Virus record (IMG/VR): IMGVR_UViG_3300042386_001233
Coordinates: 124,001-188,000 of that record
Direction: 5' to 3' (one strand)
Length of the DNA: 64,000 nucleotides
Shown piece by piece: positions 35,218 through 63,685 of this stretch (within the stretch, counting starts at the first letter, position 1; every line of letters starts with the position of its first letter). The notes beneath the pieces were generated by a model. The model did not search any database. It was given only the letters and a program-made list of their open reading frames with translations, and had not been told where the DNA came from. The position numbers were made by a program, and so were the translations under genes.

Positions 35218-35256
35218 ATTTTACACTAATCGGCAAGCTTGTCAAGGGGTCTTGAG
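35218..35256 (-). promoter_or_regulatory. interlocked sigma70 + sigma28-like promoter (rIIB)
   Basis: TTGACA-N16-TAAAAT overlapped by CTCAAG-N16-GCCGATTA. Confidence 0.7.
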
Positions 35257-35266
35257 AAATTCCTGA

Positions 35267-37951
35267 CTACTTGATCAAACTACTCAACTGAATCTTAAAA
35301 AGGTCAATATTCTCCTGACTCATCTGCTCAATCCAATCCTTGCTAGACTTTCCATAATAGGAACTACGATCTTCAAGAATAGGATTCTGACTAGGCTTTA
35401 GGTCTGTCAGATTGCCGCTAACTTGATGAGTTCCCATCATATATTTCAGCATAGGATTCTTGTCTACTTCAGCCTTAATCTTCTCCCTAATTTCAGAGAT
35501 TTTCCATCTCTTAAGATCTTCAGTAGAAGTTCCACGAATAATCTTGAGATAACCCTCTGCCTTGTCTTGATTAGTCACAGAATACAAACGAGTGACAATC
35601 ATGTTTGTCAAGGTGTTATAGGCCAAATTAGCATTACGAATCTCTTTACTATCAACATCTTCAATCCCAGCCTCTTTCATAAGCTTAGAAATATGAGAAA
35701 GATATTCTGTTTGACTGAACTTAGTGATATTAAAAGGATGAATATGAACAGTATTAGCAAAGAACTCTGTTAGCATTGTTTTGTTCAAGCAATCAACAAG
35801 AGTCTTATTGCCAATAAACTTATCATAATCCAATCCAAAGATACTCAGAACATGAAACATAAACTGCTTATCGGTTGTTCCATACTGGCAATATCTATAG
35901 CCGCCAGTAGTCTTTTCTTCAGTTGCAAAATCTTTCTTGCAATATTCAACAAGCTTGTTGATAGAAGCAAGATTCTTAAAGTGCTTGTTAGCAACAACTT
36001 TAAGTTGACGCTTCAAGAAATCATTGAAGTTAACAAGATTATATCCGTCTTTCTCAAGCTTTTTAGCAAAAGCTGTTTTGATAGCATAAACCTTACTATC
36101 TCCAACCAAGTCCTTGACTATACTCTTGAGTTTATCATCACTAAGAGTAATAGCGATGTCATTAATCTCAGGATAACCAGACTCAGGCTCAGTCTTATAA
36201 CGAAGCATAGGAACATACACAATCTCATCCTGTTCCAGAAAATCCTCTAGTTGTTCTTCTGAAAGAATTCTGAGACAAGTAGCATCATTATAAGGATTAG
36301 TAATCTGCTTACTGTCCTTATCATAACCGTGGATAAAGAATACATCTTGATCACTAACACTACCATTAGAATTTCTATTGTAAGACTTTCTTGGGCCAGA
36401 ACTTTGTGTCAGATGTTTATAGTCTGAAACCTTGAGCAGATTTCCAGCCCCAACATCTTCGATCAGTTGATCAAAACCTTCTCCGCTTTTTGTATGATCC
36501 TTAGTGTCGATCATCAGATAAGCAAAGCAATCGTTTGCATTACAATATCTTGTAAGAATTTTCTTGGCACTTTCTTCACTAGCAACGTCGCAGACAAAGA
36601 AAGCCATCGTTCCCTTCTTTTTCTGATTATTCCAGTAATAGGAACCTTTACCAGTAAGAGTTTCATGATGGATTCTGTCTGTCAGAGCAACTTGGCGGCG
36701 AGAACGATAGCCAGCAGTCTTGTAATTAAAAACGTACAGACTCTTACCGGCAGGAATTTTATATTCCAAGTCATTGCCAGAGTTGATAGGATGATCTTTA
36801 CCCTTGGGATCAGTCCAAGTAGCACCAACACCCCAGCCGCCAGCCAATTCATTCATAGCATAGTATGAAGTAATTGCTTCTACCTTGTTTTGGGCAGCTT
36901 GAATTTTCTTGGAGAATTCTTCCTTCATCTCCATGTAAATTTCTTGAGTCTTTTTACGCAGTGTCTTGATAACATCTTTAGTATACTGCAAACCTTCACG
37001 GCTAACATCCATTTCCAGTTCACCGATACCAAAATCAAGCTCAAGATAAAGGCCGGAGTTCAGAATCTCTCCAACGAAACTCTTCCAAGAATCAATATCT
37101 GCTTTCTGGAAAGCCCTATTCCACTTCTGAATATGATCGGGCATCTCATCCTTCTCTTGACCAACAATCTGTGCGGTCTGAACAGGATAAGCGATATTGC
37201 CCATGATAGCTACGATACCACTATCAATTCGATGATAACCATTAGGGAAATAACTATTATCATTATTAAGTCGGCATACCCTCCAACCTTCACCACTAAT
37301 GATGATGTTGGTATTACTATACTTATGATCTTGCAGATTATTTCCGATACCACCTTCAAGGATGGGTTTCATGCGGAAATAGTGGAAGATTCTCTTAGCC
37401 TTGTCGGTAAACTCTTGGAAATCATGCTGCTTAACAGCGAAACTAATTTCAAGACCATTAGGCTCAGACGTATCTGAAGTATTGAAAAGATTCAGAGTAG
37501 GCACTCCGCTCTCGTCAATCGCAGCAATATAGGTATACTTCTTACCGTTGTAATATGATGCCGTGGTGAAACTCTTGGTATACGCGAAGGGACTCTTAGA
37601 CCCTAGACCAAGACAACCAACAAAATCATTACTATCATTCTTGTTGGACGCACCATAAGTTGTATACAAGTCCTCCATATCGGCCTGACTAAGACCAGTG
37701 CCATAATCTCTGACTACGAAGGTAGGATTGGCAGCGGTAGGCAAAGTCACCTTAAAGGGATTCTTATTCCCGGCAGAGATATGACTATCATAAGCATTAG
37801 TAGAAAGCTCACGAATCGCAGCCATAACCTTATCAGAGTAAAGAGAGTCTGAAAGGATTTTAAACATTTTGCTCGTCTGAGCAATATTGAACTGATTCCT
37901 GCTTGCAACTCCAACGCTGTGAGTCTCAATCGTCCTATCTGCCAACTTCAT
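35267..37951 (-). CDS. rIIA: T4 rIIA-like protein (GHKL ATPase N-terminus)
   Basis: FKILSDSLYSDK.AAIRELSTNAYDSH, RDYGTGLS, YGASNK, GCLGLGSKSPFAYT, SREGLQY; directly upstream of rIIB. Confidence 0.88.
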   Translation of the reverse strand: MKLADRTIETHSVGVASRNQFNIAQTSKMFKILSDSLYSDKVMAAIRELSTNAYDSHISAGNKNPFKVTLPTAANPTFVVRDYGTGLSQADMEDLYTTYGASNKNDSNDFVGCLGLGSKSPFAYTKSFTTASYYNGKKYTYIAAIDESGVPTLNLFNTSDTSEPNGLEISFAVKQHDFQEFTDKAKRIFHYFRMKPILEGGIGNNLQDHKYSNTNIIISGEGWRVCRLNNDNSYFPNGYHRIDSGIVAIMGNIAYPVQTAQIVGQEKDEMPDHIQKWNRAFQKADIDSWKSFVGEILNSGLYLELDFGIGELEMDVSREGLQYTKDVIKTLRKKTQEIYMEMKEEFSKKIQAAQNKVEAITSYYAMNELAGGWGVGATWTDPKGKDHPINSGNDLEYKIPAGKSLYVFNYKTAGYRSRRQVALTDRIHHETLTGKGSYYWNNQKKKGTMAFFVCDVASEESAKKILTRYCNANDCFAYLMIDTKDHTKSGEGFDQLIEDVGAGNLLKVSDYKHLTQSSGPRKSYNRNSNGSVSDQDVFFIHGYDKDSKQITNPYNDATCLRILSEEQLEDFLEQDEIVYVPMLRYKTEPESGYPEINDIAITLSDDKLKSIVKDLVGDSKVYAIKTAFAKKLEKDGYNLVNFNDFLKRQLKVVANKHFKNLASINKLVEYCKKDFATEEKTTGGYRYCQYGTTDKQFMFHVLSIFGLDYDKFIGNKTLVDCLNKTMLTEFFANTVHIHPFNITKFSQTEYLSHISKLMKEAGIEDVDSKEIRNANLAYNTLTNMIVTRLYSVTNQDKAEGYLKIIRGTSTEDLKRWKISEIREKIKAEVDKNPMLKYMMGTHQVSGNLTDLKPSQNPILEDRSSYYGKSSKDWIEQMSQENIDLFKIQLSSLIK

Positions 37952-37991
37952 CTGTATTCTCCAAAAGTGTTATCGTTCCTGTGATGGCTCA

Positions 37992-38020
37992 AGTATACCA
38001 TCGGCAAACCATCTTGTCAA
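37992..38020 (-). promoter_or_regulatory. sigma70 promoter (rIIA)
   Basis: TTGACA-N17-TATACT, with GCCGAT in the spacer. Confidence 0.8.
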
Positions 38021-38268
38021 GCATCACTTTTCTTTTGTTGTCTGTCTGAGATTATTTTAAAACCGATAGCTATGTCTATCAGACCCAAAACTTTTAAAAA
38101 TGGCACTGGCAAAGTGAATGTCATCCCTCCGACAAGTATGCAAAGAAGTCCCATAATCCATACAACAAACTTTGGCATCCAATCAAATAATGACAAAAGA
38201 TAACTCATTGGCCCTATAATTAGCACAGATAAAAAAATAATTGTTACTAGTAGAGCTAAACTAGCCAT
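38017..38268 (-). CDS. small membrane protein
   Basis: Three hydrophobic segments. Confidence 0.6.
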   Translation of the reverse strand: MASLALLVTIIFLSVLIIGPMSYLLSLFDWMPKFVVWIMGLLCILVGGMTFTLPVPFLKVLGLIDIAIGFKIISDRQQKKSDA

Positions 38269-38567
38269 TAGTTATCTTCATTATCATAATCGCCTGGATC
38301 AAAATCCTCATCTTCATAAGGATTCCATTCTGTATTATATTCATCTTCTTCTTCTTCTTCGTCTATTTGTTCCTCCATTAATTCAATTGCGTCCATAACA
38401 ACTTCAAATTCTTGAATTTTATTAAGAACAAGATCTACTTTTTTGTCTAGATTTTTGATAAGTTTCTTTAACTCGCTAATATCTTTTGAAAGATTGTCTT
38501 CTATTTGATGTATCTCTTTATTAGCTTTGATTATCTCTTTGTTAATATTCTCAATATCTCTTGACAT
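38268..38567 (-). CDS. coiled-coil protein with very acidic tail
   Basis: Heptad pattern then EEEEEDEY...DEDF. Confidence 0.55.
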   Translation of the reverse strand: MSRDIENINKEIIKANKEIHQIEDNLSKDISELKKLIKNLDKKVDLVLNKIQEFEVVMDAIELMEEQIDEEEEEDEYNTEWNPYEDEDFDPGDYDNEDN

Positions 38568-38580
38568 AAGTAGTTACCTA

Positions 38581-38922
38581 TTATAGACGTTTATATTCTT
38601 TAATATCTCCATTTTCAATAATCTTCTTATCTTCGTATGAGCTTGCTGCACGACGATAAAATTCTTGCTTAATATTCTCTAATACACCAGTAATCATAGC
38701 AATCTTGGAGTATGAAATGTCTCCCATAATCCCACCTAATATTCGAGAAAAACAATAGTTAATTTTACCTAAAAGCATCATTGTTTGATTGTCTGTCAAG
38801 TTTTGTTGTTGGCAAATTTCTCCCTCTAAGGAGCATTTAAATACAAAAATTAAACTATCTATATGATTATCTAGTATTTTTCTATCTTGTTCTTTGATAT
38901 ATGGCATTTTAAATTCCTTCAC
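38581..38922 (-). CDS. conserved phage hypothetical protein
   Basis: MPYIK...G.INY...GVLENIKQEFYRR...YED.KI.ENGD. Confidence 0.6.
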   Translation of the reverse strand: MKEFKMPYIKEQDRKILDNHIDSLIFVFKCSLEGEICQQQNLTDNQTMMLLGKINYCFSRILGGIMGDISYSKIAMITGVLENIKQEFYRRAASSYEDKKIIENGDIKEYKRL

Positions 38923-39463
38923 ACTTACATTGGTATTTTAAACAATATGAACATTTTGGGCCGGGATCAGAATTTCCAAAATAATTAGCATAACCATCCC
39001 AGGTTTCTTTACCCGTGTCGATGCAAACCAATTTAGCTTTACCGTCTCTTATAATATAACCAATATTTTTTGTGTGACAGTCCCAAAATTTTAACTTTGT
39101 TTTGTCATATATAGATTCTACTAATTCTTGTATTTTCCATAGCTTAGTTTTTTCGCTACTTTCTTTAGCCAGTTCAGTAACATATCCCCAACCACTTATT
39201 TTATGAGGAAAGAAAGGCTCGTACCTCATTTTGCACAATTCAGAACAGACCTTGGGAGCAAGATCATAACTACTTAATTTGGACTGAATTTGTCTGGCGT
39301 ATGATGCTCTAGACTTAGAAATAAATTCTTTGAATCCTAAAGATGGTTCATTAGAGACTTTAAACAAAGTACAATAACCACCGTTTTCACTATAGTAGTC
39401 AGATAAATCAACTTTATATTTTGTACTTACCATATTAATAAGAGATAACTTGAGGAATTTCAC
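38909..39463 (-). CDS. protein kinase-like (PKL fold) protein
   Basis: GGYC, GFKEF, LAPKV, YVTELA, DCHTKNIG (catalytic loop), IDTG (DFG equivalent). Confidence 0.65.
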   Translation of the reverse strand: MKFLKLSLINMVSTKYKVDLSDYYSENGGYCTLFKVSNEPSLGFKEFISKSRASYARQIQSKLSSYDLAPKVCSELCKMRYEPFFPHKISGWGYVTELAKESSEKTKLWKIQELVESIYDKTKLKFWDCHTKNIGYIIRDGKAKLVCIDTGKETWDGYANYFGNSDPGPKCSYCLKYQCKCEGI

Positions 39464-40824: not shown

Positions 40825-40853
40825 AAGAGTAAACTCATTTAAAAAGGATTAAG

Positions 40854-41128
40854 TAGGAGCGGTGAGAATCGAACTCACACTGGATGGATTTTCTTGCCAC
40901 TATAGTTTTCACTACCATTTCTGTTTGTGGTCTGGACTTTATCTTAACCATAACTTTCGTTTTAGGTTCCTGCCGTCAAGTCTCTACACCTTCATAATAT
41001 TTCTATTAAGCTTGGCTCGGTATTAGCAGTTAAGCCTCCACCGAATTTGACAGGTTCTACATCAAAGATTTCTCTTTAAGCACTCAAATTGTATAAGTCC
41101 ATTGTCTCTGCCGTTGGACTACGCTCCC
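40854..41128 (-). tRNA. trnL: tRNA-Leu(UAA) interrupted by a group I intron
   Basis: Exon1 GGGAGCGUAGUCCAACGGCAGAGACAAUGGACUU (41128-41095) + exon2 AAAAUCCAUCCAGUGUGAGUUCGAUUCUCACCGCUCCUA (40892-40854); spliced loop CUUAAAA. Confidence 0.9.
40893..41094 (-). mobile_element. self-splicing group I intron (tRNA-Leu UAA type), 202 nt, no ORF
   Basis: Inserted after U34; IGS GAGU pairs with ACUU; P AAAUUCGGUG, Q AAUACCGAGCCAA, R GUGUAGAGACUUGACGG, S AAGAUAAAGUCC; terminal G. Confidence 0.9.
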
Positions 41129-41133
41129 GTATA

Positions 41134-41215
41134 CTTCCAAGCTACATATCATAACGATTGGTTAGATGTTTGTCTATGTGTCTCTACCAATATTTATGAG
41201 GGATGTAGTTGGAAG
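41134..41215. other. long interrupted inverted repeat / hairpin just upstream of tRNA-Leu
   Basis: CTTCCAA/TTGGAAG, CTACAT/ATGTAG, TCATAA/TTATGA, ATTGGT/ACCAAT nested pairs. Confidence 0.65.
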
Positions 41216-41235
41216 CATTTGGTTTACACTAAGAC

Positions 41236-41520
41236 TCAGCCGTTAGAATGAGCAGCCTTTAGACGGCGAACAGTCTCAGCCATAGCCTCGACATTATCCA
41301 CAGTCTTTGTGGGCTTTGCTCGCTCCATCGCTGGCAGTTCAATGCCCTTCTTAGCCAGAGCGGCCTTTGTACGAGCATAACGAGCCATCGTACTAGCAAC
41401 CTTCTGACCAGTCTTACTGGCAATCTCAGCATAGGTCTTGCTGGAAAAAACTGCCTCAAGGAACTGGTCATCACTGCAACGAACACGACTCTGCTTCTCA
41501 GTAGTAGTAACTTCAGCCAT
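41236..41520 (-). CDS. small basic HTH-like DNA-binding protein
   Basis: SKTYAEIASKTGQKVASTMAR; GGAGG SD; own promoter. Confidence 0.6.
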   Translation of the reverse strand: MAEVTTTEKQSRVRCSDDQFLEAVFSSKTYAEIASKTGQKVASTMARYARTKAALAKKGIELPAMERAKPTKTVDNVEAMAETVRRLKAAHSNG

Positions 41521-41577
41521 AATCAACCTCCAAATTCTTAACCAATCTACAACCAAGGCTCAGTCAAGCGACTGATC

Positions 41578-42198
41578 TTACCTTGCGTTGTTCCTTCGAT
41601 TGTACAACATAGTATCGTCACTGTCAATGGGCGACCTTGAAATTTTTTTCGTTCTCGCCAGAAATTGCTGTTGAACGTCTTTAAAGCTCCAAGGAGTACC
41701 AAACTCCACCCCATCTCTTTTATTATCGACCCCTACATCAAGAGTGAGCGTTCCAGAAGCAACGTCCTCACGATGCAGTCTGCCATGAACATGACCATAA
41801 AGCATCCAACTTTTCCTATAGCTACCAGACCAACTTCTCATAGGATAATGACACATAAATATCTTTTGATTAACATACAGAATCATTTTCTGATCAGACA
41901 CACTAGAAAATCCACTAGTAAACTTAGTTGGTTCATCATGATTACCAAGAATAATGTGAACATTCTCACAAACTATTCTTTCTCTATATGAGAGAGCAGT
42001 TCCACCCTTATGACAGAAATCTCCTATAATATAAAGAATATCGTTTTGTCCAACTGTTTCGTTTATAGAAGAAATAATTTTAGCGTCCATCTCTCCACCA
42101 GTAGAAAATGGACGATTACAATATCCTATAATATTCCTATGTCCCAGGTGAAGATCAGCAGTAAAAAATACTTTCTGACCATCAACTATCTTATCCAT
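41578..42198 (-). CDS. calcineurin-like metallophosphoesterase
   Basis: TADLHLGH, GDF, GNHD, CHYP, YGHVH, DVGVD. Confidence 0.9.
   Translation of the reverse strand: MDKIVDGQKVFFTADLHLGHRNIIGYCNRPFSTGGEMDAKIISSINETVGQNDILYIIGDFCHKGGTALSYRERIVCENVHIILGNHDEPTKFTSGFSSVSDQKMILYVNQKIFMCHYPMRSWSGSYRKSWMLYGHVHGRLHREDVASGTLTLDVGVDNKRDGVEFGTPWSFKDVQQQFLARTKKISRSPIDSDDTMLYNRRNNAR
41599..41641 (-). promoter_or_regulatory. interlocked sigma70 + sigma28-like promoter
   Basis: TTGACA-N17-TACAAT with TTCAAG-N16-GACGATAC. Confidence 0.75.
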
Positions 42199-42202
42199 TA
42201 AA

Positions 42203-42388: not shown

Positions 42389-42484
42389 AAGTAGATCCTT
42401 TAATAATTTGTTGAATCTGATATTCTGAATAGCCAGACATTAACATTGCTTGATGATAACCGATAACGGGAATGAGTTCTGAAA

Positions 42485-43558
42485 TCATGATGTTTCCTTT
42501 GGTGAGTATAGAGTAACCTTAATTATTATATACCCATCCCGCCCACTGTCAATATTCTGTATTGATGATATTCTTCCTTTACCCAAGAATGAATCACCAA
42601 CTAACAAGAATGGCCCGCCGTCTAAGTTAGCAGAAGTTATTATTGAGATATCTGATTGACATCCAAATTTCGCCCAATCGCTTTCTCCCTCAACCAAATA
42701 TTCATATTCCCCAATTTGTGTTATTATTCTTTTGTTTTTGTTCTTAGACTGTAAGCACTGGCTCATTAAAAGCCTCACTATCGAGTATATAACCTTGATT
42801 ATTTTCTGACGTTAGGTTAGCAAGAACGTCTTTTAGTCTTTGATTTTCTTTCTCAAGGGTATTCATTATTTTTTCAGCTTGATTTAAAGCTTTCTGAAGA
42901 GATTTAACTCTATTAGCTAATTGATCGTTCATATATTCTGTTGCTGTTCTGACAACCATGATTAGCCTCCTTGATATGAGTTTGACAACCTTATATTATA
43001 CACCTTACAGGTTAAGTCCATTTAAGAATTTTTGTAAATCTTTGAGTTGTTTTTTGTCTAACACCATCTGATCAGCATAGGGCTTTTTATATGCTAAAAC
43101 TTGAAAACAGTACCTTAGTCTCTGCCATAATGACATCTTATTACTATAGTTTGTATAATGCTCAAATATAGCCAAATCTGCCAACTCAATTTCATGGTCA
43201 TATTCTATTACCAATATCTCACTCTTACAAGAACACGGAATGAATAGTGTCTTATTTTCTTTTAGATTGGTTACGCTTCCCATGTTTCTTCTTTCTAAAA
43301 ATTCTTTCGTAGTTTTTGTCCCAAGTATCTTGAGAAACTAGACTGACTCTTCTTTTAGACCCTTTACCATTTTGGCTCATCATTTTCTCCTACATACAAA
43401 AATTCGTTCTCTTTTACAATATATAGTGTTGATGAATCCCCATAAATTTCATACAAATAAGAACCATCTCCTTGAGGCATGTCTTTATTCAGATAACCAT
43501 ACTCTATTATCTCATTATCTCTCATAATAGCAACTCTAGGAAATCTCATTGGACTCAT
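42485..43558 (-). CDS. cluster of small hypothetical proteins
   Basis: ORFs 42485-42778, 42744-42959, 43005-43283 and 43364-43558, plus a short MSQNGKGSKRR ORF starting at about 43382. Confidence 0.5.
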
Positions 43559-44253
43559 GATTCTAGTACATAACTCCAGTAGCGACTATCTTCTTTCTTT
43601 TGAAGATCATCCCAATAGATCGACCTTGCTACATAGGATGGGACTTTCAATTTACCACAGTTAACCATCCAATGCCGCTCCATCTTCTTATAGATTTGTG
43701 AACCAATCTTGCTCTTATTATACTTCAGAGCCTCAACATCGTAAAGCCTCAGTTGATGAATATCTCCGCAGAGTACCCTAGCCTCATTAGGATGAATCAT
43801 CTCAAGAGCAAAGCTAATCTTAGCCAGACCAATTCCGCTAATCTTATTGAGGATACTATCACGTTTCTTAACATGATACTTCTTTGTGGTCAGATAAAAA
43901 TCTTTAGGATTAGCCCAAAACTTGGTGCTAAAATCCCAGATATAAGCGGTGCGATTATTGTGCAACCCAACACCACTCTTGTGGAGTTTTGTCAAAAGAA
44001 TTTCTTTACTATCTACCCATTCGCTAAAATTCTTGATAGCATTGTATCCCTTGACATTACCCTGCCAAGTGGTATGCACTGAACAATAGGCAAAGAGATA
44101 GCGACGGAAAATATCTTCGTCAGTCTTGGGGCGAACACTCTCCCAATAGTCTTTATAGGCAACTACCTTATCCTTCGGAAAATTCTTGAAAAACTCATCG
44201 GCCTTGCTGGTACTCATAACAATCGGCTTTTTCTCAACAACAATCTCTGTCAT
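43555..44253 (-). CDS. HhH DNA glycosylase-like protein (8-oxoguanine glycosylase type)
   Basis: HhH motif ISGIGLAKISF followed by LCGDIHQLR (DxH). Confidence 0.6.
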   Translation of the reverse strand: MTEIVVEKKPIVMSTSKADEFFKNFPKDKVVAYKDYWESVRPKTDEDIFRRYLFAYCSVHTTWQGNVKGYNAIKNFSEWVDSKEILLTKLHKSGVGLHNNRTAYIWDFSTKFWANPKDFYLTTKKYHVKKRDSILNKISGIGLAKISFALEMIHPNEARVLCGDIHQLRLYDVEALKYNKSKIGSQIYKKMERHWMVNCGKLKVPSYVARSIYWDDLQKKEDSRYWSYVLES

Positions 44254-44290
44254 AATGTCCTCAAAGGTTGGTTCCAAAGTGTATGCTCAC

Positions 44291-44334
44291 ATTCTACACT
44301 AGTCCTATCGTCTTGTCAAGCCCCGTTTCTTGAA
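44291..44334 (-). promoter_or_regulatory. interlocked sigma70 + sigma28-like promoter
   Basis: TTGACA-N17-TAGAAT with TTCAAG-N16-GACGATAG. Confidence 0.75.
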
Positions 44335-44797: not shown

Positions 44798-45778
44798 TCA
44801 ATCGGTTTTATCCTTTACTTCCTTCACATATTTCATCAATGGATTTTCTTGTTTAGGTATAATGGTTTTATGATTAGTAGTCCATGCTGGCAGTTTACCA
44901 GATAGCTTAGTTTTCTTTTTAGCTTTTTGTTTTTGGTATTGTTCTTCTAGTCTTATTCTTTTTTGTTGAAAAGTTTCTTTCGGTTTATTTTTTTGGAAAT
45001 GTGGCCTTATGCAACTTTTAAGTTTTTCACTAGCATTAGGATGATTCAATAGAAGATTTATAAAATATGGAAAAGCTTGACGTAGTTGTTTTTTAATTTC
45101 ATCTTCACTAAGATTATTATAGTATTTTACTTTAGAATTAATCCATGATTGATCTTTGTTTTTAAAATAATTGCTAATATCTTTATTGTCAACAGCTTTA
45201 GGCTTTTTTTTCTTTTTATGTTGCTTTATATAGTTATCAATTTCATTTTTTATAACATCTAAAGACGATTCTTCTTTTTTCGATGTTGTATTTATTACTT
45301 CTGGTTTATTAGCATTAGTAGAGATAGGTTTCTTTTTGTTTTTATTCTTATGTTTCTTTCTCTTGATATGGTTATGCTCAAATAGTCTTTCTGAATTATA
45401 TTGAATATCACTATTAAATGCTTGAGCCCAAATTTGCCATTCATCTAAAGTATTTTTGCTATTTTGACAAAATAATTTATTTAACAAGCTTTTCTTTTTA
45501 CCAATATGCTTGTCTTGCTCAACAAAATTATGGCATGGTTCACACAATGTAATTAATTCATGCTGATCTCCCTGACCCAGCATGATAATTTTTGTGTAAT
45601 CAATATGATGAACTGTTTTAGAAGGAGTGCCACATACTTGACAACATTTACCATCTCTTTCTAAGACTAATTGCCTAATATTCCACCATAGTCTAGATTT
45701 TATATAGGCATCATAACTTCTAAAACCTAGCTCTTTCCATGCTGGTGGCATAATTCTATATGTCTCTTTCTTCTCCAT
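44798..45778 (-). CDS. HNH endonuclease with long Lys-rich C-terminus
   Basis: VLERDGKCCQVCG...VHHIDY...LITLCEPCH. Confidence 0.8.
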   Translation of the reverse strand: MEKKETYRIMPPAWKELGFRSYDAYIKSRLWWNIRQLVLERDGKCCQVCGTPSKTVHHIDYTKIIMLGQGDQHELITLCEPCHNFVEQDKHIGKKKSLLNKLFCQNSKNTLDEWQIWAQAFNSDIQYNSERLFEHNHIKRKKHKNKNKKKPISTNANKPEVINTTSKKEESSLDVIKNEIDNYIKQHKKKKKPKAVDNKDISNYFKNKDQSWINSKVKYYNNLSEDEIKKQLRQAFPYFINLLLNHPNASEKLKSCIRPHFQKNKPKETFQQKRIRLEEQYQKQKAKKKTKLSGKLPAWTTNHKTIIPKQENPLMKYVKEVKDKTD

Positions 45779-46376
45779 GAAGAATCTTATTACTTTTCTT
45801 GATGTTGTCTATTGCCCACAATGGTTGTAAATTTGTATAGTGAAAACATTTTTTTTGTTCTGACTCTTTGGACATATCAAATGATGAACATGGTAATATA
45901 TGATCTATATGCCATTTTCCATAATTGTCCCAACTCATTCCAATTGTGAATTTAGTTTCTAGATGAATTTTTAACTCACTTATTGTGCATCCTAAATAAT
46001 CTAAGGTCGTTGTCGTTTTTTTATTATTCTTGATGGCTGTTCTTAATCTAGTCCTTAAATTATAGGCTATTTTAAAAGACACGTCCTGTTTTCTTCTTGC
46101 TTTCTCTCTTTTTGCTCTTTGTTGATATATCTTTTTTTTATGCTTGTCAAAATATTCTTGTACCTTGTCCTTATTTTCTTCTCTATATTTTTTAGCATAT
46201 TCTAGCTTAGAGTCTTTATTTTGAATGTAATTATTAGTAACCCTATCTAATACATTGGCTTTATTCTTTTTGTACCATTCTTGCTGACATTTTTTATTGC
46301 AATTTTTGCACCATGTTCCTTTTTTCCATTCATTATGTTCTACTTTACAAGAAGAGCAGATTTTATTCTTTTTCAT
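45756..46376 (-). CDS. HNH-like homing endonuclease
   Basis: CSSC...CKNC, LGCTI.EL..HLE, MSWDNYGKWHIDHILP...CFHYTNLQPLWA.DN..K. Confidence 0.8.
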   Translation of the reverse strand: MKKNKICSSCKVEHNEWKKGTWCKNCNKKCQQEWYKKNKANVLDRVTNNYIQNKDSKLEYAKKYREENKDKVQEYFDKHKKKIYQQRAKREKARRKQDVSFKIAYNLRTRLRTAIKNNKKTTTTLDYLGCTISELKIHLETKFTIGMSWDNYGKWHIDHILPCSSFDMSKESEQKKCFHYTNLQPLWAIDNIKKSNKILHGEERDI

Positions 46377-47767: not shown

Positions 47768-47796
47768 ATTCTACCATACGGTAGTCCCTTTGTCAA
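47768..47796 (-). promoter_or_regulatory. sigma70 promoter (ligase)
   Basis: TTGACA-N17-TAGAAT. Confidence 0.75.
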
Positions 47797-48008
47797 GTAT
47801 CATCTAATCGGTTTCGTTTCTTAAATACTATCGCCATAGACTGAACCAAATCGCTGCCAGAAGTTTGAAACCAACATGGAAAAAACGCATGAATTATCAA
47901 ACAAAATCCAGCCAATAAAGATAAGCATCCAAAAAATACAGCAAACCTAAAATGTTGCCAGTATGTCATATTGTTTTCTGCTAGGTGTTCTTTAATCTTA
48001 TTTTTCAT
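47793..48008 (-). CDS. small membrane protein (DUF6356-like)
   Basis: HL..NNMTYWQHFRFA...IHAFFP..F.T.GS. Confidence 0.6.
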   Translation of the reverse strand: MKNKIKEHLAENNMTYWQHFRFAVFFGCLSLLAGFCLIIHAFFPCWFQTSGSDLVQSMAIVFKKRNRLDDT

Positions 48009-48345
48009 ATCGTTTTTGTCTTGAAAGAAAATAATTCATAGCGTTAACGATGCTCTGAAAATCATCACCCAGTTTGCCTATGCCAGTATTGCAAGGTTCA
48101 CAGAGCCAGCCCCTAAAACTATTATCATCATGATCATGATCTAAGGCCCATTTGTAGGGAACCTTTTTACAGCACTCACATACTTCTGGTTTTGGTGGCG
48201 CTTTTTTATGTAGCTTAACTCTAATCTTAGAATGTTTTTTAACACACTTGCGACATCTGCTATCAAGATTATCTTTGTACATAGTGTGTTTGGGAAAACT
48301 TGCTAAGTTTTTACGTTTTCCACAGTAAGTACAAATTTTTCTCAT
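47998..48345 (-). CDS. endonuclease VII-like homing endonuclease
   Basis: CECC...LDHDH...FRGWLCEPCNTGIGKLGD. Confidence 0.85.
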   Translation of the reverse strand: MRKICTYCGKRKNLASFPKHTMYKDNLDSRCRKCVKKHSKIRVKLHKKAPPKPEVCECCKKVPYKWALDHDHDDNSFRGWLCEPCNTGIGKLGDDFQSIVNAMNYFLSRQKRYEK

Positions 48346-48354
48346 AATATTAAG

Positions 48355-48707
48355 TGGACGATTGGGGAATCGAACCCCGTCCAGTATAAACGTCTATATA
48401 AACTTCTACATTGTTAGTTACTTGTTATCACACAAATAACAAAGCTATCAGAATTATCTGAGTCAGATTGAGTACAATCATCATTCCTATTTATGTCTGG
48501 TAGGACTACCATATCCGAATATCGGAGTCAGCATGATTTGGTAATAAGGCTCATGCCGCCCCACTCATTACCTAATTAATTAGGCAGCGAGAGCGAGAGT
48601 TGAAACTTCGCCAATTAACATTTTTAATCGACTTTTATACTGGCCGGTCGATCAACCAGTCAATGCAATTTATATTTCTTTTTACCTGTCGATACCAGGA
48701 ATCGCCC
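48355..48707 (-). ncRNA. ssrA: tmRNA; tag peptide (A)GEVSTLALAA* at 48612-48580
   Basis: 5' GGGCGAUUCCUGGUAUCGAC and 3' GGACGGGGUUCGAUUCCCCAAUCGUCCA; G3.U70, A73; PK1-like region; UUAAUU before resume codon GGC; tag ends LAA-UAA. Confidence 0.93.
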
Positions 48708-48998: not shown

Positions 48999-49036
48999 AT
49001 TGTATCATATCGACCAACCACTGTCAAGACCTTTAG
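48999..49036 (-). promoter_or_regulatory. interlocked sigma70 + sigma28-like promoter (tRNA-Ile/tmRNA)
   Basis: TTGACA-N17-TACAAT with CTAAAG-N16-GTCGATAT. Confidence 0.78.
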
Positions 49037-50638: not shown

Positions 50639-50680
50639 AGTATATCTCACTTATCGGCACTGTCAAGAGGGAATCTTTAG
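50639..50680 (-). promoter_or_regulatory. interlocked sigma70 + sigma28-like promoter
   Basis: TTGACA-N16-TATACT with CTAAAG-N16-GCCGATAA (perfect sigma28 boxes). Confidence 0.8.
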
Positions 50681-52115: not shown

Positions 52116-52157
52116 TTTATACCACAAGTATCGGAGTTGTCAACAGGCAGACTTTAG
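52116..52157 (-). promoter_or_regulatory. interlocked sigma70 + sigma28-like promoter
   Basis: TTGACA-N16-TATAAA with CTAAAG-N16-TCCGATAC. Confidence 0.72.
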
Positions 52158-52160
52158 AAA

Positions 52161-54319: not shown

Positions 54320-54337
54320 AGTGTCTCCTGTGCCGGA

Positions 54338-54378
54338 ATTATATCCTAGTATCGTCAAGTTGTCAAGCCAGACTTGAG
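54338..54378 (-). promoter_or_regulatory. interlocked sigma70 + sigma28-like promoter (uvsE)
   Basis: TTGACA-N17-TATAAT with CTCAAG-N16-GACGATAC. Confidence 0.8.
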
Positions 54379-54380
54379 AA

Positions 54381-58455: not shown

Positions 58456-58492
58456 ATTCTATCTTATCGGTTTTCTCTTGTCAAGACTTCAA
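58456..58492 (-). promoter_or_regulatory. sigma70 promoter with overlapping sigma28-like boxes
   Basis: TTGACA-N17-TAGAAT; TTGAAG-N15-ACCGATAA. Confidence 0.65.
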
Positions 58493-59337: not shown

Positions 59338-59495
59338 TCATTGCTTTTCCTTTTTAGTAGATGATTCGTCTTTCACTTCTAGTTTAACGTCCTCTGGTTC
59401 CTTTGTCAAGCCCTCTGGTTGCTCGTTATAAGGGCAGTTAAAGCATCCAAGGGGCAGCAGTACCCTCTTTTTAATAGGAACTCCCTAGATAGCAT
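59338..59495 (-). pseudogene. small Cys-rich protein gene (LLKRGYCC..GC..CPY type) with a 1-nt frameshift at 59451-59454
   Basis: Frame 0 MLSREFLLKRGYCC; -1 frame LGCFNCPYNEQPEG...KEKQ*, ending in an ATGA overlap with the next gene. Confidence 0.6.
59381..59409 (-). promoter_or_regulatory. sigma70 promoter
   Basis: TTGACA-N17-TAAACT. Confidence 0.6.
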
Positions 59496-60611
59496 CAACC
59501 TGTTCGCTCTGAGGATATTCTTTGATAGTCCATCCTAGCTGTAGTAAGTCTGATCGAATTTCATCAGTAACAAAACTCTCCCCAACATATCCATCATGAT
59601 GATTACCTATTCCAGAACAATACCAATCAATATAACTCTCTCCCTTATTTCTTATATCTGCAATAACACCCCCAGCATATCTCCAAGAACAACTCCATTC
59701 TTCATCATTCTTGTAGAATAAATTATTGCACATGGCGGAATATAAATTTTGGCTGTAAGATTCGCTGTTAACACATTTGTCTGTAATATAATCCGATTTG
59801 ATAAGATCGTGTTCTAAACTAACTGTTCTCATGACCACAACTCCTTACGGATTTTAATTAGTTCAATGAGCATTTTTGTATCTTCTTTTTCGTAGTCTGC
59901 TTCAATCTTTTCAAGCTTTTTAAATTCCAGTAGTTCTTTTTTAGATATCTTTCCACCCATCAAGTTGTCTTCTTTATTCTGATCCCAGTTTAATCCAGCA
60001 ACAGTCATTGGTTCTGGTCGATTAGGACGATCTTTCCACCAGAGATAAAGTTCTTTAATCTTTTGTGCAGAGATGGCTTGGTGGGTTGGTTTTCCGTACT
60101 TTGGGTCTTTTTTATCTACTCCCCAATCTTTGGTATACTTTAAAGAACAAGCCCACTTTAGATAAGCTAATCCTGCTTCAATTGATCGACCATGTTTGAA
60201 CTTGTATTTTTTAGTACCTTTTTTAAGAGACCATTTTGCTAGGTGTGCATATTCAATCTCTACAAAATCCACAAGCTCATTAAATAACCCATGAAGAATT
60301 CTATAATCAAGCTCATAGTAATGTCCTGGCTTTAGTCTAGTTTTTAGATAGTGTGTTTTAGTTATCCAACGATTGTTGATATAGTATCTAATCTCAGTGT
60401 AAACGTCCACAGGAAACATGATCAAATCCTGTAGTTTAGGTAATACTTCTTCTGCCAGCCAATATCTTACTGGTCTTTTCTTTTTTTGTTTTTTATTCCA
60501 TTCGTCCCATTTGCCCCACTCTAAAGCAAAGGGTTTCTTCTCTCCGCGAATAAAATCCGCGAACCTAGAACAATTCCAATGATGAACTCTTGATTTTGGT
60601 CTTAGCCACAT
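59485..60611 (-). CDS. two conserved phage hypothetical proteins (59485-59838, 59829-60611)
   Basis: YSQNLYSAMCNN...WSCSWR.AGG...YIDWYCSG; HYWxCS-like N-terminus...ELYLWW...RP...MLIELIKIR..LW. Confidence 0.6.
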
Positions 60612-61413
60612 AATTTATTCCTGTACTTTAGTTCCAATATCATAAGGATATCCATCTTCTACTTCTTCACTATAAGTATCTTCATAATGATTATCCCACC
60701 AAGGAATTTTACTATCTGGTAATGTACTCATGATTAAAATTGAAATTCTTTTAGGATATTTAATATTCGTCGTGCTAATGCAGCACCACCGACAATTCTA
60801 CCATCATTATAATCTTCACCATATCCAGCACTAGCCTCATGATCTTTTTGTGCTTTGATCTTTTGGTTACACAATTTCATAATTTCAAGTATGCTAGTTT
60901 TTTCTTTGTCGTTCATACAAATAATCTATCCTGCAATAGTTTTCTAACTGTTTCTGTTACATTAATCCCATTAAGTATAATGTCGTCAGAGCCATAAGGA
61001 TTACTTGGCATCTTTTTAGCAACCGTATTGTATAGCCAAAATATAACAAACCGCTCATTTTCTGTCACAGAATGGCCTCCTTGGTTTCCTCATCAAGAAC
61101 AGGATTATCAAAAGATTCTATTAGTCTTTGTAGGGTAACTTTAAGATCTTCTAAGCCTTCTTCCATAATTCTAATAGGTTCTTCTGTCCAGCCTTTTACT
61201 TTCCCATCTTCATCATAATAAACTTCATGGATAGCATAATAAATACTGTCATCATCAATATGTCTAATTATTCTATGATTCCACATGATATAATCCTTTG
61301 TATTAAAGCAGAATTGGTTTTGGTCATTTACGAAAACTTTTCTGCAAACAAAACCTACGGCTGTTGATTATTGAGGATACCCGCGACCCCAACCTTTCGG
61401 CATCAACATTTTA

Positions 61414-61441
61414 ATTATACTACCCGATACTAGACTGTCAA
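61414..61441 (-). promoter_or_regulatory. sigma70 promoter followed by a structured leader
   Basis: TTGACA-N16-TATAAT. Confidence 0.75.
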
Positions 61442-62041
61442 TAGTTCAGTTTCCAATTCGTTTAAACATCTGAAATCCGTACCACTTATATTCATATTCC
61501 AACTCTTATGATAATGACCAAATCGCCATTTCTTAGGTTGATGAATATTAAATAGCTCTTGCAAAGCCCATCCTGTTAGGTTCTCATATTTTCTTTGGTT
61601 GGAATCTAGTATTTGTAAACTAACTTCGTCTGGACAATCATGAGTTAAAACAATATCAGGCTTGATCTGTCTATAAAGCTCTCTGGCCTTCAAGAATTGA
61701 TCAATAGTAACCTGTTCTTGCTGCCACCAATTTATTCCAATAGTTCGATCTTGACGATCAATACTATAGGCTCCACGATAAAAAAAGAAGGATATTCCAT
61801 TCAATGTGGTAAAACCATAATCTCCCAAGTAATGAGGAATATGAATAATCCTATCATAATGATCATGATTTCCTCCTATGATCTTGTGTTTTTCATCGTC
61901 CACATTAAATACTGTACCATAATCAAAACCAAAATCTCCTAATTGAATAGTATATGGATGACGATCTTTTTCTCTGATAATTTCATGGTAGCGTTTATAT
62001 TTACCATGAACGTCGCCAATAAGAGTTATTGAATCTTTCAT
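61430..62041 (-). CDS. calcineurin-like metallophosphoesterase
   Basis: IGDVHG, QLGDFG, GGNHD, GAYSID, LTHDCP, FGHYH. Confidence 0.9.
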   Translation of the reverse strand: MKDSITLIGDVHGKYKRYHEIIREKDRHPYTIQLGDFGFDYGTVFNVDDEKHKIIGGNHDHYDRIIHIPHYLGDYGFTTLNGISFFFYRGAYSIDRQDRTIGINWWQQEQVTIDQFLKARELYRQIKPDIVLTHDCPDEVSLQILDSNQRKYENLTGWALQELFNIHQPKKWRFGHYHKSWNMNISGTDFRCLNELETELLTV

Positions 62042-62505
62042 ACTCCATCCAAAGGATCGTTTTCATAAGGATAACTAAACGGCCCTAAAACACTTTTTCT
62101 TTTTTCTTTCAGTAAATCAATTACATCATTGAAGCACGACTCGCACAGATCAACCTCAAATCTTGATCCATCATTCTTTGAGCCATATCCCCAACAAGAT
62201 TCAAGAGTGGCATAATCTGGCCCAACATCTGGATAGTTAGTGGTACTTTTCCCACAAGCATCACATGAAACGTCATCAAGAACTTTTCTAATTTCTTCTT
62301 TAAATGTTCTCATTACCATCTTCGTGACGGGTCACGCCTTTTTGGTTTCTTATTTTTAAGTTTAGTCATAGACCAACCGTATGGTACTGTATTGTATTGA
62401 CTTTTAGAAAGGCCAATATATTCTGCCCAGTAATCCATAGTTTTTTTGTATCCATCAATAATAACGTCTTTGGAACAAGTTTTCTTCAACAAATCTTCAA
62501 AACTC

Positions 62506-62667
62506 TTAGCCATTGTTAATAATCTCCAGAATAGTTTCTGCTAGTGTTGAACGCCCAACAATTCGTCCATCCTCATAAGGATCATTATAACTAGATTTTT
62601 GACTCCAACATTGCATAATACCCAAGCACATTCGCCTAATTTCTTCCAGTTTTTCTTCTTTAGTCAT
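62506..62667 (-). CDS. small hypothetical protein (not in ORF track), paralog of 60734-60916
   Basis: Manual translation MTKEEKLEEIRRMC...DPYEDGRIVGRSTLAETILEIINNG*. Confidence 0.6.
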   Translation of the reverse strand: MTKEEKLEEIRRMCLGIMQCWSQKSSYNDPYEDGRIVGRSTLAETILEIINNG

Positions 62668-63175
62668 TTTCTACCTCTGTTGGAATATAGAGCGGTTGTT
62701 TAATATTGCATCGTCCAAGAGCAATTCTAACGCCCAGCTTTTTATTATAGTTTTCTTTCTTGCTACAAATAGCCAGCCCTTCGTAATGATCACCAGATGG
62801 ACTGTCAATTACAATTTGAGTTGATCCACCTTTAGTATCTGGATCAACAGGCCCATAACCATGATCTCCACTAGGCTTGCTACCTACTTGCCACTTATAG
62901 TAGCCGTTATAAAGACGATTATGAAGAACCCTAACCTTGTAGCCATCATTACGAAGCTGTTGAATTGTCATATTTTCTCCAATTTATTAATGTAGACCAC
63001 AAACTTCCACTGTACGAGTGATAATAATAGTATTATATTCCTGCAAAAAACTATTTAGATCATCTTGTTTAATAACTAGTTCACAGTTATTCTGACCGAT
63101 AAAATACTTGTCAAGCAAATTTTGAACTTTTTGTTGAACTGTTGGACTCATTAGATTTTCTCCAAGGTATGCCCT

Positions 63176-63216
63176 AGTATACTACAGTATCGGCGTTTGT
63201 CAACAACCAACTTTAA
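63176..63216 (-). promoter_or_regulatory. interlocked sigma70 + sigma28-like promoter
   Basis: TTGACA-N16-TATACT with TTAAAG-N16-GCCGATAC. Confidence 0.8.
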
Positions 63217-63651
63217 AAATCAGCTAGGAACTTTTTCTTTGTAGTCCTTTACTTCTGCTATGAGTTTTTTCAGTTTTTCATTATCTTTCAAATCAGATAA
63301 CGTATAGTTAACTCTACGATTTTGTCTAGAGTCTGGATTCATGTCGCCCAAAAACAAAATACTAATAGCTAAACCGGAACTAACAATTAAAGTAATTATT
63401 AGCCCTGCAAAAAAAATAAACATTTCCATGATTAATCTCCCTTATAAGAGAATAGATTACCAAGACTAAGAATACTAGGAACCCACAAACCTACAAAAAG
63501 TCCACTATCTTTAGCCTCTGGCATACCACTGAACCAAAGACCAACACTAAGAGCAAAGCTCAAAAAAGCAGCAACCAAAACACTAATCTTAAAAACGCTC
63601 ATAATAAAACTCCGGTTTGTGTTTGTTAAAATAACCTTTCGATACCCTTGC

Positions 63652-63685
63652 ATTATACATCGTCATACTCAGCAGTCAACTTGAA
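63652..63685 (-). promoter_or_regulatory. sigma70 promoter with overlapping sigma28-like boxes
   Basis: TTGACT-N16-TATAAT; TTCAAG-N15-GACGATGT. Confidence 0.65.

What the first reader, a model, noticed from the sequence alone, without database searches (positions are those of the whole stretch)
35218..63685. Interlocked double promoters: a sigma28-like YTMAAG-N16-NNCGATW threaded through sigma70 TTGACA-N16/17-TAtaaT
Seen: eight promoters (35218, 41599, 44291, 48999, 50639, 52116, 54338, 63176) contain both a sigma70 pair and a second pair, (C/T)T(A/C)AAG ... (G/T)(C/A/T)CGAT(A/T), spaced exactly 16 nt. Two more (58456, 63652) have 15 nt. The gap between TTGACA and the CGAT box varies from 1 to 7 nt across the eight while the second pair keeps a fixed spacing, so it behaves as an independent promoter rather than an operator. 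Known: FliA/WhiG sigma28 recognises TAAAG...GCCGATAA with a spacer about 2 nt shorter. Inference: early genes fire whether the host is in a housekeeping or a flagellated/developmental state, or expression is handed over to the phage sigma (1810-2409).
Basis: partly seen in the sequence, partly recalled or inferred. Interest (0 to 1): 0.8.

Follow-up and report, generated by a model that had tools for sequence, protein, structure and literature searches.

The report
Second promoter threaded through early promoters
In an uncultured freshwater jumbo phage, ten strong host-type early promoters each carry a second, flagellar-sigma-like two-box signal at a fixed internal spacing, conserved in hundreds of relatives and sometimes standing alone, so it is most likely a second promoter class whose reader is still unknown.

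Summary
All ten sites lie on the minus strand. YTMAAG-N16-NNCGATW occurs 8 times against 0.18 expected, and never at N15 or N17. Two relaxed N15 sites complete the ten.

In about 200 related IMG/VR loci I found 343 non-redundant copies. They are strand-specific, spaced 16 or less often 15, with consensus (C/T)T(A/C)AAG and G(C/A)CGATA. These match the sigma28 -35 and -10 boxes, but the spacer is 2 nt longer than canonical.

The pair slides against the TTGACA/TAnnnT pair. It is nested around the -35, wholly upstream of it, or shifted downstream. In relatives it stands alone in front of one conserved gene. The half-sites show no symmetry. This favours an autonomous promoter over an operator.

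Canonical host FliA does not fit the spacing. The phage sigma (1810-2409) is a generic two-domain sigma with a sigma70-like region 4.2 helix and no FliA signature. A third motif, GGTGTAT(A/T), competes for it.

Verdict: a new variant of phage multi-sigma promoter wiring, with the mechanism inferred rather than shown.

The parts
35218..35256 (-). Dual promoter upstream of rIIB. Left box CTCAAG 35256-35251; -35 TTGACA 35245-35240; right box GCCGATT 35234-35228; -10 TAAAAT 35223-35218.
   Evidence: 20.0 bits. Conserved in 47 distinct relatives.
41599..41641 (-). Dual promoter upstream of the small HTH ORF. Left box TTCAAG 41641-41636; -35 41627-41622; right box GACGATA 41619-41613; -10 TACAAT 41604-41599.
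   Evidence: (19.8 bits).
44291..44334 (-). Dual promoter upstream of the Ogg-like glycosylase gene (43555-44277). Left box TTCAAG 44334-44329; -35 44319-44314; right box GACGATA 44312-44306; -10 TAGAAT 44296-44291.
   Evidence: In the orthologue alignment the flanks are unrelated but the boxes are kept. Gene family.
48999..49036 (-). Dual promoter upstream of tRNA-Ile(TAT). Left box CTAAAG 49036-49031; -35 49027-49022; right box GTCGATA 49014-49008; -10 TACAAT 49004-48999.
   Evidence: Orthologues switch between spacing 15 and 16 through indels on either side of TTGACA.
50639..50680 (-). Dual promoter. Left box CTAAAG 50680-50675; -35 50666-50661; right box GCCGATA 50658-50652; -10 TATACT 50644-50639.
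   Evidence: best score in the window, 21.4 bits.
52116..52157 (-). Dual promoter. Left box CTAAAG 52157-52152; -35 52143-52138; right box TCCGATA 52135-52129; -10 TATAAA 52121-52116.
   Evidence: 15.8 bits.
54338..54378 (-). Dual promoter upstream of an endonuclease gene. Left box CTCAAG 54378-54373; -35 54366-54361; right box GACGATA 54356-54350; -10 TATAAT 54343-54338.
63176..63216 (-). Dual promoter. Left box TTAAAG 63216-63211; -35 63203-63198; right box GCCGATA 63194-63188; -10 TATACT 63181-63176.
   Evidence: 20.8 bits.
58456..58492 (-). Dual promoter with spacing 15 and a weak left box. Left box TTGAAG 58492-58487; -35 58484-58479; right box ACCGATA 58471-58465; -10 TAGAAT 58461-58456.
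   Evidence: (11.7 bits).
63652..63685 (-). Dual promoter with spacing 15. Left box TTCAAG 63685-63680, abutting the -35 TTGACT 63679-63674; right box GACGATG 63664-63658; -10 TATAAT 63657-63652.
   Evidence: (17.7 bits).
37992..38027 (-). rIIA promoter with a decayed second pair. Left-box position reads GTGATG 38027-38022; -35 38020-38015; right box GCCGATG 38005-37999 is kept; -10 TATACT 37997-37992.
   Evidence: Distant relatives have CTAAAG, TTAAAG or ATCAAG at the left-box position.
47768..47825 (-). Ligase promoter with the second pair wholly upstream. TTTAAG 47825-47820, then N15, then GATGATA 47804-47798 (CGATA mutated to TGATA here), then C, then -35 47796-47791; -10 TAGAAT 47773-47768.
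   Evidence: Relatives carry TTCAAG-N15-GACGATAC-TTGACA.
1810..2409 (-). Phage sigma-70-family factor of 199 aa, with a sigma2 and a sigma4 domain and a disordered linker. It is a candidate reader, not a demonstrated one.
41236..41520 (-). Small early HTH protein (about 94 aa from its Met), directly downstream of dual promoter P41627. It is a candidate DNA-binding regulator under the rival operator reading.
   Evidence: weak Sigma70_r4_2 match, E = 0.007; phrog_323, D5-like regulator, E = 0.003.

Best explanation
The second pair is an autonomous promoter class, (C/T)T(A/C)AAG-N16(15)-G(C/A)CGATA(A). It is read by RNA polymerase carrying a specificity factor other than the host housekeeping sigma. 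It is laid over, or directly beside, the sigma70-type early promoters of this phage family.

Each dual site should therefore give two starts: one 6-8 nt after the TAnnnT hexamer, and one 8-9 nt after the CGATA box. At P44319 the predicted starts are about 44284 and about 44297 on the minus strand.

Functionally it would work like T4 middle promoters. Early-region genes such as rIIB, a tRNA, nucleotide-metabolism genes and nucleases would be served by a second holoenzyme, and so stay expressed independently of sigma70.

Shown: the motif, its spacing, strand bias, conservation, sliding register and stand-alone copies.

Inferred: that it is a promoter, and who reads it. My ranking of readers is:
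- the phage sigma family of 1810-2409, about 0.35;
- a FliA-type sigma with a longer spacer optimum, either the unknown host's or a second phage sigma outside the window, about 0.25;
- something else for the remainder.
For: 1. Spacing specificity. In the window there are 8 hits at N16 against 0.18 expected and none at N15 or N17. In 80 rIIA loci the gene strand has 132 hits at N16, 24 at N15 and 8 at N17, against 0-2 on the other strand. In 118 further loci, after excluding the hits that selected them, there are 168 at N16 and 99 at N15 against a background of 5-21.

2. Half-site identity. The two halves are dissimilar and ordered. The G at the first right-box position (0.89) was not imposed by my pattern. 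The boxes match the sigma28 consensus TAAAGTTT-n11-GCCGATAA and the P. aeruginosa fliC promoter, TCTAAAG at -36 to -30 and GCCGATAA at -15 to -8.

3. Sliding register. Among 343 non-redundant sites, the -35 lies nested between the boxes in 287 (register +6 to +15). The pair lies wholly upstream in 14 (+29/30). It is shifted downstream in 23 (-6 to -8), as in TTGACA-CTCAAG-N10-TATAAT-GTCGATA. Within one orthologous promoter, indels on either side of TTGACA keep the box spacing at 15-16.

4. Stand-alone copies. Upstream of a conserved 119-aa membrane-protein gene, 10 of 11 distinct loci carry the pair, and 2 of these (L192, L136) also have a nested TTGACA. For 7 of them I inspected the spacer or scored it for a sigma70 pair and found none (L128, L219, L179, L138, L184, L189, L232); L185 has only a weak candidate. 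The spacers are unrelated in sequence and the spacing is 15 or 16. The eighth base of the right box is A in 6 of 7 stand-alone copies, which completes G(C/T)CGATAA.

5. Conservation. The boxes are kept across relatives with 58-100% rIIA identity, even where the flanking DNA is non-homologous.

6. A phage sigma with an intact sigma4 domain co-occurs on the same contigs. Its DNA-contact segments YSYRNQC and VSREA(V/I)RQ are conserved down to 49% overall identity.
Against:
- In the window itself the pair never occurs without TTGAC, and none is seen in 34 kb of non-early genes. The 45 loci around the sigma gene show no enrichment at spacing 16.
- The register distribution is not uniform. It peaks at +13 to +15, with one box usually abutting the -35. 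This could mean functional coupling to sigma70 region 4. Part of the peak is selection bias from the pattern used.
- The spacer is 16, not the canonical 14.
- The phage sigma scores as a generic sigma70-family protein. It reaches 26 bits against the FliA/WhiG model, whose cut-off is 190.
- Its region 4.2 helix aligns with primary SigA: GVSREAIRQ against GVTRERIRQ. That predicts a TTGACA-like -35 rather than TAAAG.
- A third motif, GGTGTAT(A/T), is a competing candidate for its regulon.
Confidence: 0.55

Rival explanations
1. The pair is a bipartite operator. A phage-encoded early regulator, for example the small HTH protein at 41236-41520, or a host regulator, binds the two boxes about two helical turns apart. 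It shuts off or modulates the strong sigma70 early promoters by occluding the -35, the spacer or the start site.
For: - In the window every copy overlaps a sigma70-type promoter.
- In nearly all 343 family sites one box abuts the -35 hexamer, and the registers cluster rather than spread evenly.
- The box centres are about 22 bp apart, so they lie on the same face of the helix.
- A small HTH protein is encoded right behind one of the best-conserved dual promoters.
- Early shut-off is a common need in large lytic phages (general knowledge).
Against: - The half-sites share no dyad or direct-repeat symmetry.
- Orientation is strictly co-directional with the genes.
- A tolerance of one base pair in spacing is typical of sigma factors.
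- Stand-alone copies have no detectable sigma70 pair and sit about 25-45 nt upstream of a start codon.
- Both boxes equal a known promoter consensus.
Confidence: 0.2
2. Host flagellar sigma (FliA, SigD or WhiG type) reads the second pair from time zero. Early genes then fire from both the housekeeping and the motility holoenzyme.
For: - 13 of 14 consensus positions match sigma28 promoters in both boxes, and the order and orientation also match.
- The sites are confined to the early region, where host-read promoters are expected.
- The phage sigma shows no FliA-like determinants.
Against: - The modal spacer is 16 and the minor class is 15. Hits at the canonical 14 are at background level: 8 against 4 on the other strand, and 12.
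- Alternative sigmas tolerate little change in spacer length (general knowledge).
- The host is unknown, and many freshwater plankton are non-motile.
- C is as frequent as A at the second -35 position.
Confidence: 0.2
3. Sigma appropriation, as with T4 MotA/AsiA. Host sigma70 stays on the polymerase. A phage activator binds the left box, and the CGATA(n)T stretch serves as a weak -10.
For: - The phage has T4-like gene content (rIIA, rIIB, clamp loader) and an early region of small ORFs.
- 56% of sites have T two bases after CGATA, giving GATAnT.
Against: - The conserved G(C/A)C just upstream of GAT has no role in sigma70 -10 recognition.
- No MotA or AsiA homologue was seen among the roughly 40 early ORFs scanned.
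- The box lies 2 bp further from the -10-like element than a -35 would.
Confidence: 0.08

Closest known systems
Sigma28 (FliA/SigD/WhiG) promoters: TAAAGTTT-n11-GCCGATAA
   Same: Both boxes, their order and their orientation match. The left box with its upstream T's resembles the P. aeruginosa fliC TCTAAAG. The right box G(C/A)CGATA, with a final A in stand-alone copies, equals GCCGATAA.
   Different: There are 16 nt (less often 15) between TAAAG and GCCGATA, against 14. C is as common as A at the second -35 base. The sites sit inside or beside sigma70 promoters of a phage. No FliA-type protein has been identified.
T4 middle promoters (MotA/AsiA) that serve early-region genes alongside early promoters
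   Same: A second promoter class is confined to the early region. It stands in front of the same kinds of genes (rIIB, tRNA, nucleotide metabolism, nucleases). This would give two transcription modes for one gene set. The T4 side of this comparison rests on general knowledge.
   Different: There is no MotA box at a fixed distance from a sigma70 -10. The element has its own -10-like box. The two promoters are physically interleaved at variable register.
Phage-encoded sigma cascades (for example SPO1 gp28 middle promoters)
   Same: The phage encodes a two-domain sigma, and a bipartite promoter distinct from the host consensus exists in the genome.
   Different: The promoter sequence is different. 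A link between this sigma and this motif is not shown. Systematic threading through host-type promoters is not a described feature of SPO1, as far as I know.
Two-half-site operators spaced two helical turns apart over early promoters (for example the phage P2 C repressor)
   Same: The box centres are about 22 bp apart and flank core promoter elements.
   Different: Those half-sites are repeats of one sequence, whereas here the halves are unrelated. Stand-alone copies occur without a promoter to repress.

Membership tests
Sigma28 (FliA/WhiG/SigD)-dependent promoter | -35 element TAAAG | tested here: met
   The left box is (C/T)T(A/C)AAG, with T, A, A and G invariant by construction of the search pattern, and A 0.46 / C 0.52 at the second base. 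T-rich positions upstream resemble TCTAAAG.
Sigma28 (FliA/WhiG/SigD)-dependent promoter | -10 element GCCGATAA | tested here: met
   The right box is G (0.89), C/A, C, G, A, T, A (0.67). The G was not imposed by the pattern. The eighth base is A in 6 of 7 stand-alone copies.
Sigma28 (FliA/WhiG/SigD)-dependent promoter | 14 nt between TAAAG and GCCGATAA (n11 in the TAAAGTTT-n11-GCCGATAA notation) | tested here: not met
   The modal spacing is 16 and the minor class is 15. Spacing 14 is at background level.
Sigma28 (FliA/WhiG/SigD)-dependent promoter | Transcription by a FliA holoenzyme, starting about 8 nt after the box | not testable with these tools
The host is unknown.
Dual (overlapping) promoters for two sigma factors | Two complete element pairs, each with its own fixed internal spacing, within one promoter region | tested here: met
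   TTGAC(A/T)-N16/17-TAnnnT and YTMAAG-N15/16-GMCGATA occur at all ten window sites.
Dual (overlapping) promoters for two sigma factors | Independence of the two pairs: variable register, and each able to occur alone | tested here: met
   Registers are -8 to -6, +6 to +15 and +29/30. Sigma70-only promoters occur at 42552 and 61441. Second-pair-only sites occur in relatives.
Dual (overlapping) promoters for two sigma factors | Two transcription starts | not testable with these tools
Repressor operator | Dyad or direct-repeat symmetry of the half-sites | tested here: not met
   TAAAG against the reverse complement of CGATA (TATCG) matches at 3 of 5 positions, and the TCAAG variant at 2 of 5. There is no direct-repeat similarity.
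Repressor operator | Always positioned over a promoter that it controls | tested here: inconclusive
   This holds in the window. It does not hold for the stand-alone sites in relatives.
Sigma-70 family protein (ORF 1810-2409) | Sigma2 and sigma4 domains above curated thresholds | tested here: met
   TIGR02937 scores 46.6 bits against a cut-off of 42.9, over residues 13-193. Pfam Sigma70_r4 scores 42.2 against 24.1. The AlphaFold model has mean pLDDT 78, and Foldseek's top hits are all sigma factors.
FliA/WhiG subfamily (ORF 1810-2409) | Score above the subfamily cut-off, and a FliA-type region 4.2 helix | tested here: not met
   TIGR02479 scores 26.3 bits against a cut-off of 189.6. The helix GVSREAIRQ aligns with primary SigA GVTRERIRQ. 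P. aeruginosa FliA reads the -35 with S224 and Q228.

The most novel reading that the evidence does not exclude
A large family of uncultured jumbo phages wires its early genes to two RNA polymerase holoenzymes by threading a flagellar-type promoter through housekeeping promoters. In the first case, early expression would sense whether the cell is flagellated, as a flagellotropic phage might need.
Probability: 0.2. Interest if true: 0.8.

Novelty: new variant of a known kind. Interest (0 to 1): 0.6.

Why it matters
Phage temporal programmes are known from a handful of cultured models. This one is a widespread freshwater jumbo-phage family with no cultured relative. The collections hold 223 sigma-bearing contig stretches and hundreds of copies of the motif.

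The family shows a clean, conserved promoter grammar with three classes:
- sigma70-type promoters;
- a sigma28-like pair with a shifted spacer;
- a motif with no -35 element, GGTGTAT(A/T).

The physical interleaving of two promoters at many registers is a natural experiment. It bears on how two holoenzymes compete for the same DNA, and on how spacer length sets sigma specificity. If the phage sigma reads the pair, it would be a compact orthogonal sigma/promoter set. If host FliA reads it, this would be a phage that couples infection to host motility.

Tried and rejected
- Megablast of 24 kb of the window against GenBank phages gave no match. A tblastn search with the sigma also gave no match. 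There is therefore no cultured relative to lean on.
- rIIA and an S8 protease gave only distant hits to many unrelated phages, so the host could not be inferred.
- I looked for stand-alone copies in the window and around the sigma gene and found none. They appeared only in more distant relatives.
- Other spacings (8-14 and 17-24) turned out to be conserved coding segments or noise.
- I tried to classify the sigma by sequence, profile and fold. It stayed a generic sigma70-family protein; SigH, SigA, SigD and sigma32 all scored alike.
- No promoter of any of the three classes lies directly upstream of the sigma gene.
- The sigma's neighbours show no anti-sigma or partner domain.
- A literature search found no description of sigma28-type promoters in phage early regions.
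- A loose definition of the downstream-shifted class (TAnnnT followed by NNCGATA) was mostly noise. Even so, it showed left boxes only at spacing 15 or 16.
- A leader motif shared by rIIA and rIIB was not recovered with a strict pattern.

Full report
**What the window is.** The window has 34% G+C. Genes in 23-64 kb run on the minus strand. It carries rIIA (35267-37951), rIIB (34302-35171), an ATP-dependent ligase, a clamp loader, ThyX, many small early ORFs, a block of sugar-biosynthesis and glycosyltransferase genes (about 4.5-22.7 kb), and a 199-aa sigma-70-family gene at 1810-2409. It has no near relative among GenBank phages. IMG/VR holds many relatives on contigs of about 200-240 kb. rIIA identity ranges from 58 to 100% in 80 loci. 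The sigma was found in 45 loci and in 223 stretches. This is an uncultured jumbo-phage family. I infer a mostly freshwater origin from the IMG sample numbers only, and the host is unknown.

**Checking the observation.** All ten sites are on the minus strand.
- YTMAAG-N16-NNCGATW gives 8 matches against 0.18 expected. With N15 or N17 it gives none.
- The two N15 sites, 58492 and 63685, need a relaxed box.
- Each site also has TTGAC(A/T)-N16/17-TAnnnT, and an independent scan ranks these among the best sigma70-like matches.
- The distance from TTGACA to the right box varies from 1 to 7 nt, as stated.
- A weight-matrix scan separates the true sites (15.8 bits or more) from background (13.5 or less). 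Within the window, no copy lacks TTGAC.

**Family-wide anatomy.** In 80 rIIA loci the spacing histogram on the gene strand is 132 at N16, 24 at N15 and 8 at N17, against 0-2 on the other strand. Other spacings proved to be conserved coding segments.

I weighted the register classes equally, so that the sigma70 elements would not leak into the logo. The consensus is then (C/T)T(A/C)AAG and G(C/A)CGATA. The leading G (0.89) was not part of the search pattern.

Orthologous promoters keep both boxes across the whole identity range, even where the flanking DNA is unrelated. Occasional losses occur. The left box is lost at the rIIA promoter in the window's clade. CGATA has become TGATA at the ligase promoter in the window.

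After removing the hits that selected these loci, they still show 168 sites at N16 and 99 at N15, against a background of 5-21.

**Register.** I found 343 non-redundant sites at 17 bits or more. Of these, 334 have a sigma70-like pair within 45 nt by a loose score.
- In 287 sites the -35 hexamer lies between the two boxes (register +6 to +15, peaking at +13 to +15).
- In 14 sites the whole pair is upstream, with CGATAC abutting TTGACA (+29/30).
- In 23 sites the pair is shifted downstream, as in TTGACA-CTCAAG-N10-TATAAT-GTCGATA (-6 to -8).

The peak is partly inflated because selected registers 14 and 15. It persists when those hits are excluded. One box usually abuts the -35. Registers in which two elements would need the same bases are absent, as expected. 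Registers -9 to -17 are also absent, and I cannot explain that.

**Stand-alone copies.** A conserved gene for a 119-aa membrane protein (MIQWVG...KDYQKGDIK) has the pair upstream in 10 of 11 distinct loci, at spacing 15 or 16, about 25-45 nt before the start codon. Two of those loci (L192, L136) carry a nested TTGACA. In seven others (L128, L219, L179, L138, L184, L189, L232) I found no sigma70-type pair, by score or by reading the spacer, and the spacers between the boxes are unrelated in sequence. L185 has only a weak candidate. In 6 of 7 stand-alone copies the eighth base is A, which completes G(C/T)CGATAA. This is the best evidence that the pair functions on its own.

**Comparison with sigma28.** The E. 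coli consensus is TAAAGTTT-n11-GCCGATAA (PMC2859248). In the P. aeruginosa fliC open complex the elements are TCTAAAG at -36 to -30 and GCCGATAA at -15 to -8, and the A at -11 is flipped out (PMC12784957). The phage boxes match both elements. However, they lie 16 nt apart (less often 15) rather than 14, and spacing 14 is not enriched anywhere. A sigma with a canonical FliA geometry is therefore a poor fit.

**The phage sigma.**
- It passes the general sigma70-family model (46.6 bits against a cut-off of 42.9). It fails the FliA/WhiG model by a wide margin (26 against 190).
- The model shows a sigma2 domain, a disordered linker (residues 93-116) and a sigma4 domain. Foldseek returns SigH, SigA, SigD and sigma32 with similar scores.
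- The family alignment shows invariant DNA-contact segments. YSYRNQC and VSREA(V/I)RQ are conserved down to 49% overall identity.
- The 4.2 helix aligns with primary SigA: GVSREAIRQ against GVTRERIRQ. It keeps the residues that, from established structural work on sigma70 and the -35 element, read TTGACA. P. aeruginosa FliA uses S224 and Q228 instead. I infer, but have not shown, that this sigma's -35 preference is TTGACA-like rather than TAAAG-like.
- No promoter of any class lies directly upstream of the sigma gene.

**A third motif.** GGTGTAT is the most enriched 7-mer in upstream regions around the sigma loci, present in 34 of 181. All nine window copies of GGTGTAWW are on the gene strand. 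About five lie just upstream of genes, including non-early genes (1058, 29651, 34272, 43004, 44782). Family-wide, 115 non-redundant copies are followed by a ribosome-binding site and a start codon, and they show no conserved -35. This class could be the regulon of the phage sigma. It could also be a late class that needs no -35, read by another factor.

**Weighing the readings.** The following favour a promoter over an operator: dissimilar ordered half-sites, a spacing tolerance of one base pair, strict co-orientation with genes, identity with a known promoter consensus, sliding register and stand-alone copies. The operator reading keeps some weight for three reasons. In the window every copy overlaps a sigma70 promoter. 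The boxes hug the -35. A small HTH protein (41236-41520) is encoded behind one of the best-conserved dual promoters.

Among the non-host motifs, only the second pair offers a -35-type box. A phage factor would also explain the non-canonical spacer. The site set (rIIB, tRNA, nucleotide metabolism) resembles T4 middle-promoter targets. Against this stand the sigma70-like 4.2 helix and the competing GGTGTAT class. A FliA-type sigma with a longer spacer optimum remains possible, whether from the host or from the phage outside this window.

**Limits.** No transcript data could be used. The host is unknown. Only 64 kb of a genome of roughly 240 kb was seen. My sigma70 scoring near motif sites is loose. 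Several counts include related sequences despite de-duplication.

Noticed in passing
window 48352-48707 (-): A phage-encoded tmRNA (Rfam RF00023, 77 bits, full-length model match). ARAGORN did not call it. A sigma70-like promoter at 48663 lies inside the Rfam range, so the true 5' end is unclear.
   Followed up: partly
window 40911-41104 (-): A group I intron (RF00028, 56.9 bits) just downstream of the small HTH ORF. The interrupted gene was not worked out.
   Followed up: no
window 28306-29307 (-): An actin-fold protein matching Pfam Volactin (E = 6e-66) and weakly matching MreB. It sits among the replication genes.
   Followed up: no
window 1058, 29651, 34272, 43004, 44782 (all -); sigma loci L081-L125: A third promoter-like motif, GGTGTAT(A/T), with no conserved -35. 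It lies just upstream of ribosome-binding sites of both early and non-early genes. It is the top 7-mer in upstream regions (34 of 181), and 115 non-redundant copies occur family-wide.
   Followed up: partly
L128, L219, L179, L138, L184, L189, L232, L185 (upstream of the MIQWVG...KDYQKGDIK gene): Stand-alone second-pair sites. Further upstream lie conserved repeats GACGTAA(A/G)(C/T)CCTT and a G+C-rich hairpin. L232 has three CTACCCAATT repeats instead.
   Followed up: partly
L017, L008, L036 and others, compared with the window: The sigma is far more divergent than rIIA between the same pairs of genomes. For example, rIIA is 92% identical but sigma only 50%. This suggests allele replacement or fast evolution outside the DNA-contact segments.
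   Followed up: no
window 16387-16752: A divergent intergenic region with back-to-back -35 hexamers (GTCAAG ... TTGACA). The minus-strand promoter at 16645 has a CTAAAG left box but no CGATA box. Similar GTCAAG-N24-TTGAC arrangements recur in relatives.
   Followed up: no
window about 4500-22700: A large block of sugar-nucleotide and glycosyltransferase genes on both strands, next to the sigma gene. It includes UDP-galactopyranose mutase, a DegT aminotransferase, GT2, GT4 and GlcNAc transferases, and an IMPDH/GMP-reductase-like gene.
   Followed up: no
window 35190-35215 and 37965-37990 (-): The rIIA and rIIB leaders share a conserved stretch: ATCACAGG(T/A)A(T/A)CG(T/A)TAAC-like. It lies between the -10 and the ribosome-binding site and may be a translational control site. 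A strict pattern search did not recover it.
   Followed up: partly
window 33659-34291, 44798-45778, 3483-4001, 47998-48345, 45756-46376 (-): Several HNH and endonuclease VII-type nuclease genes are scattered through the early and replication regions. One sits directly after rIIB.
   Followed up: no
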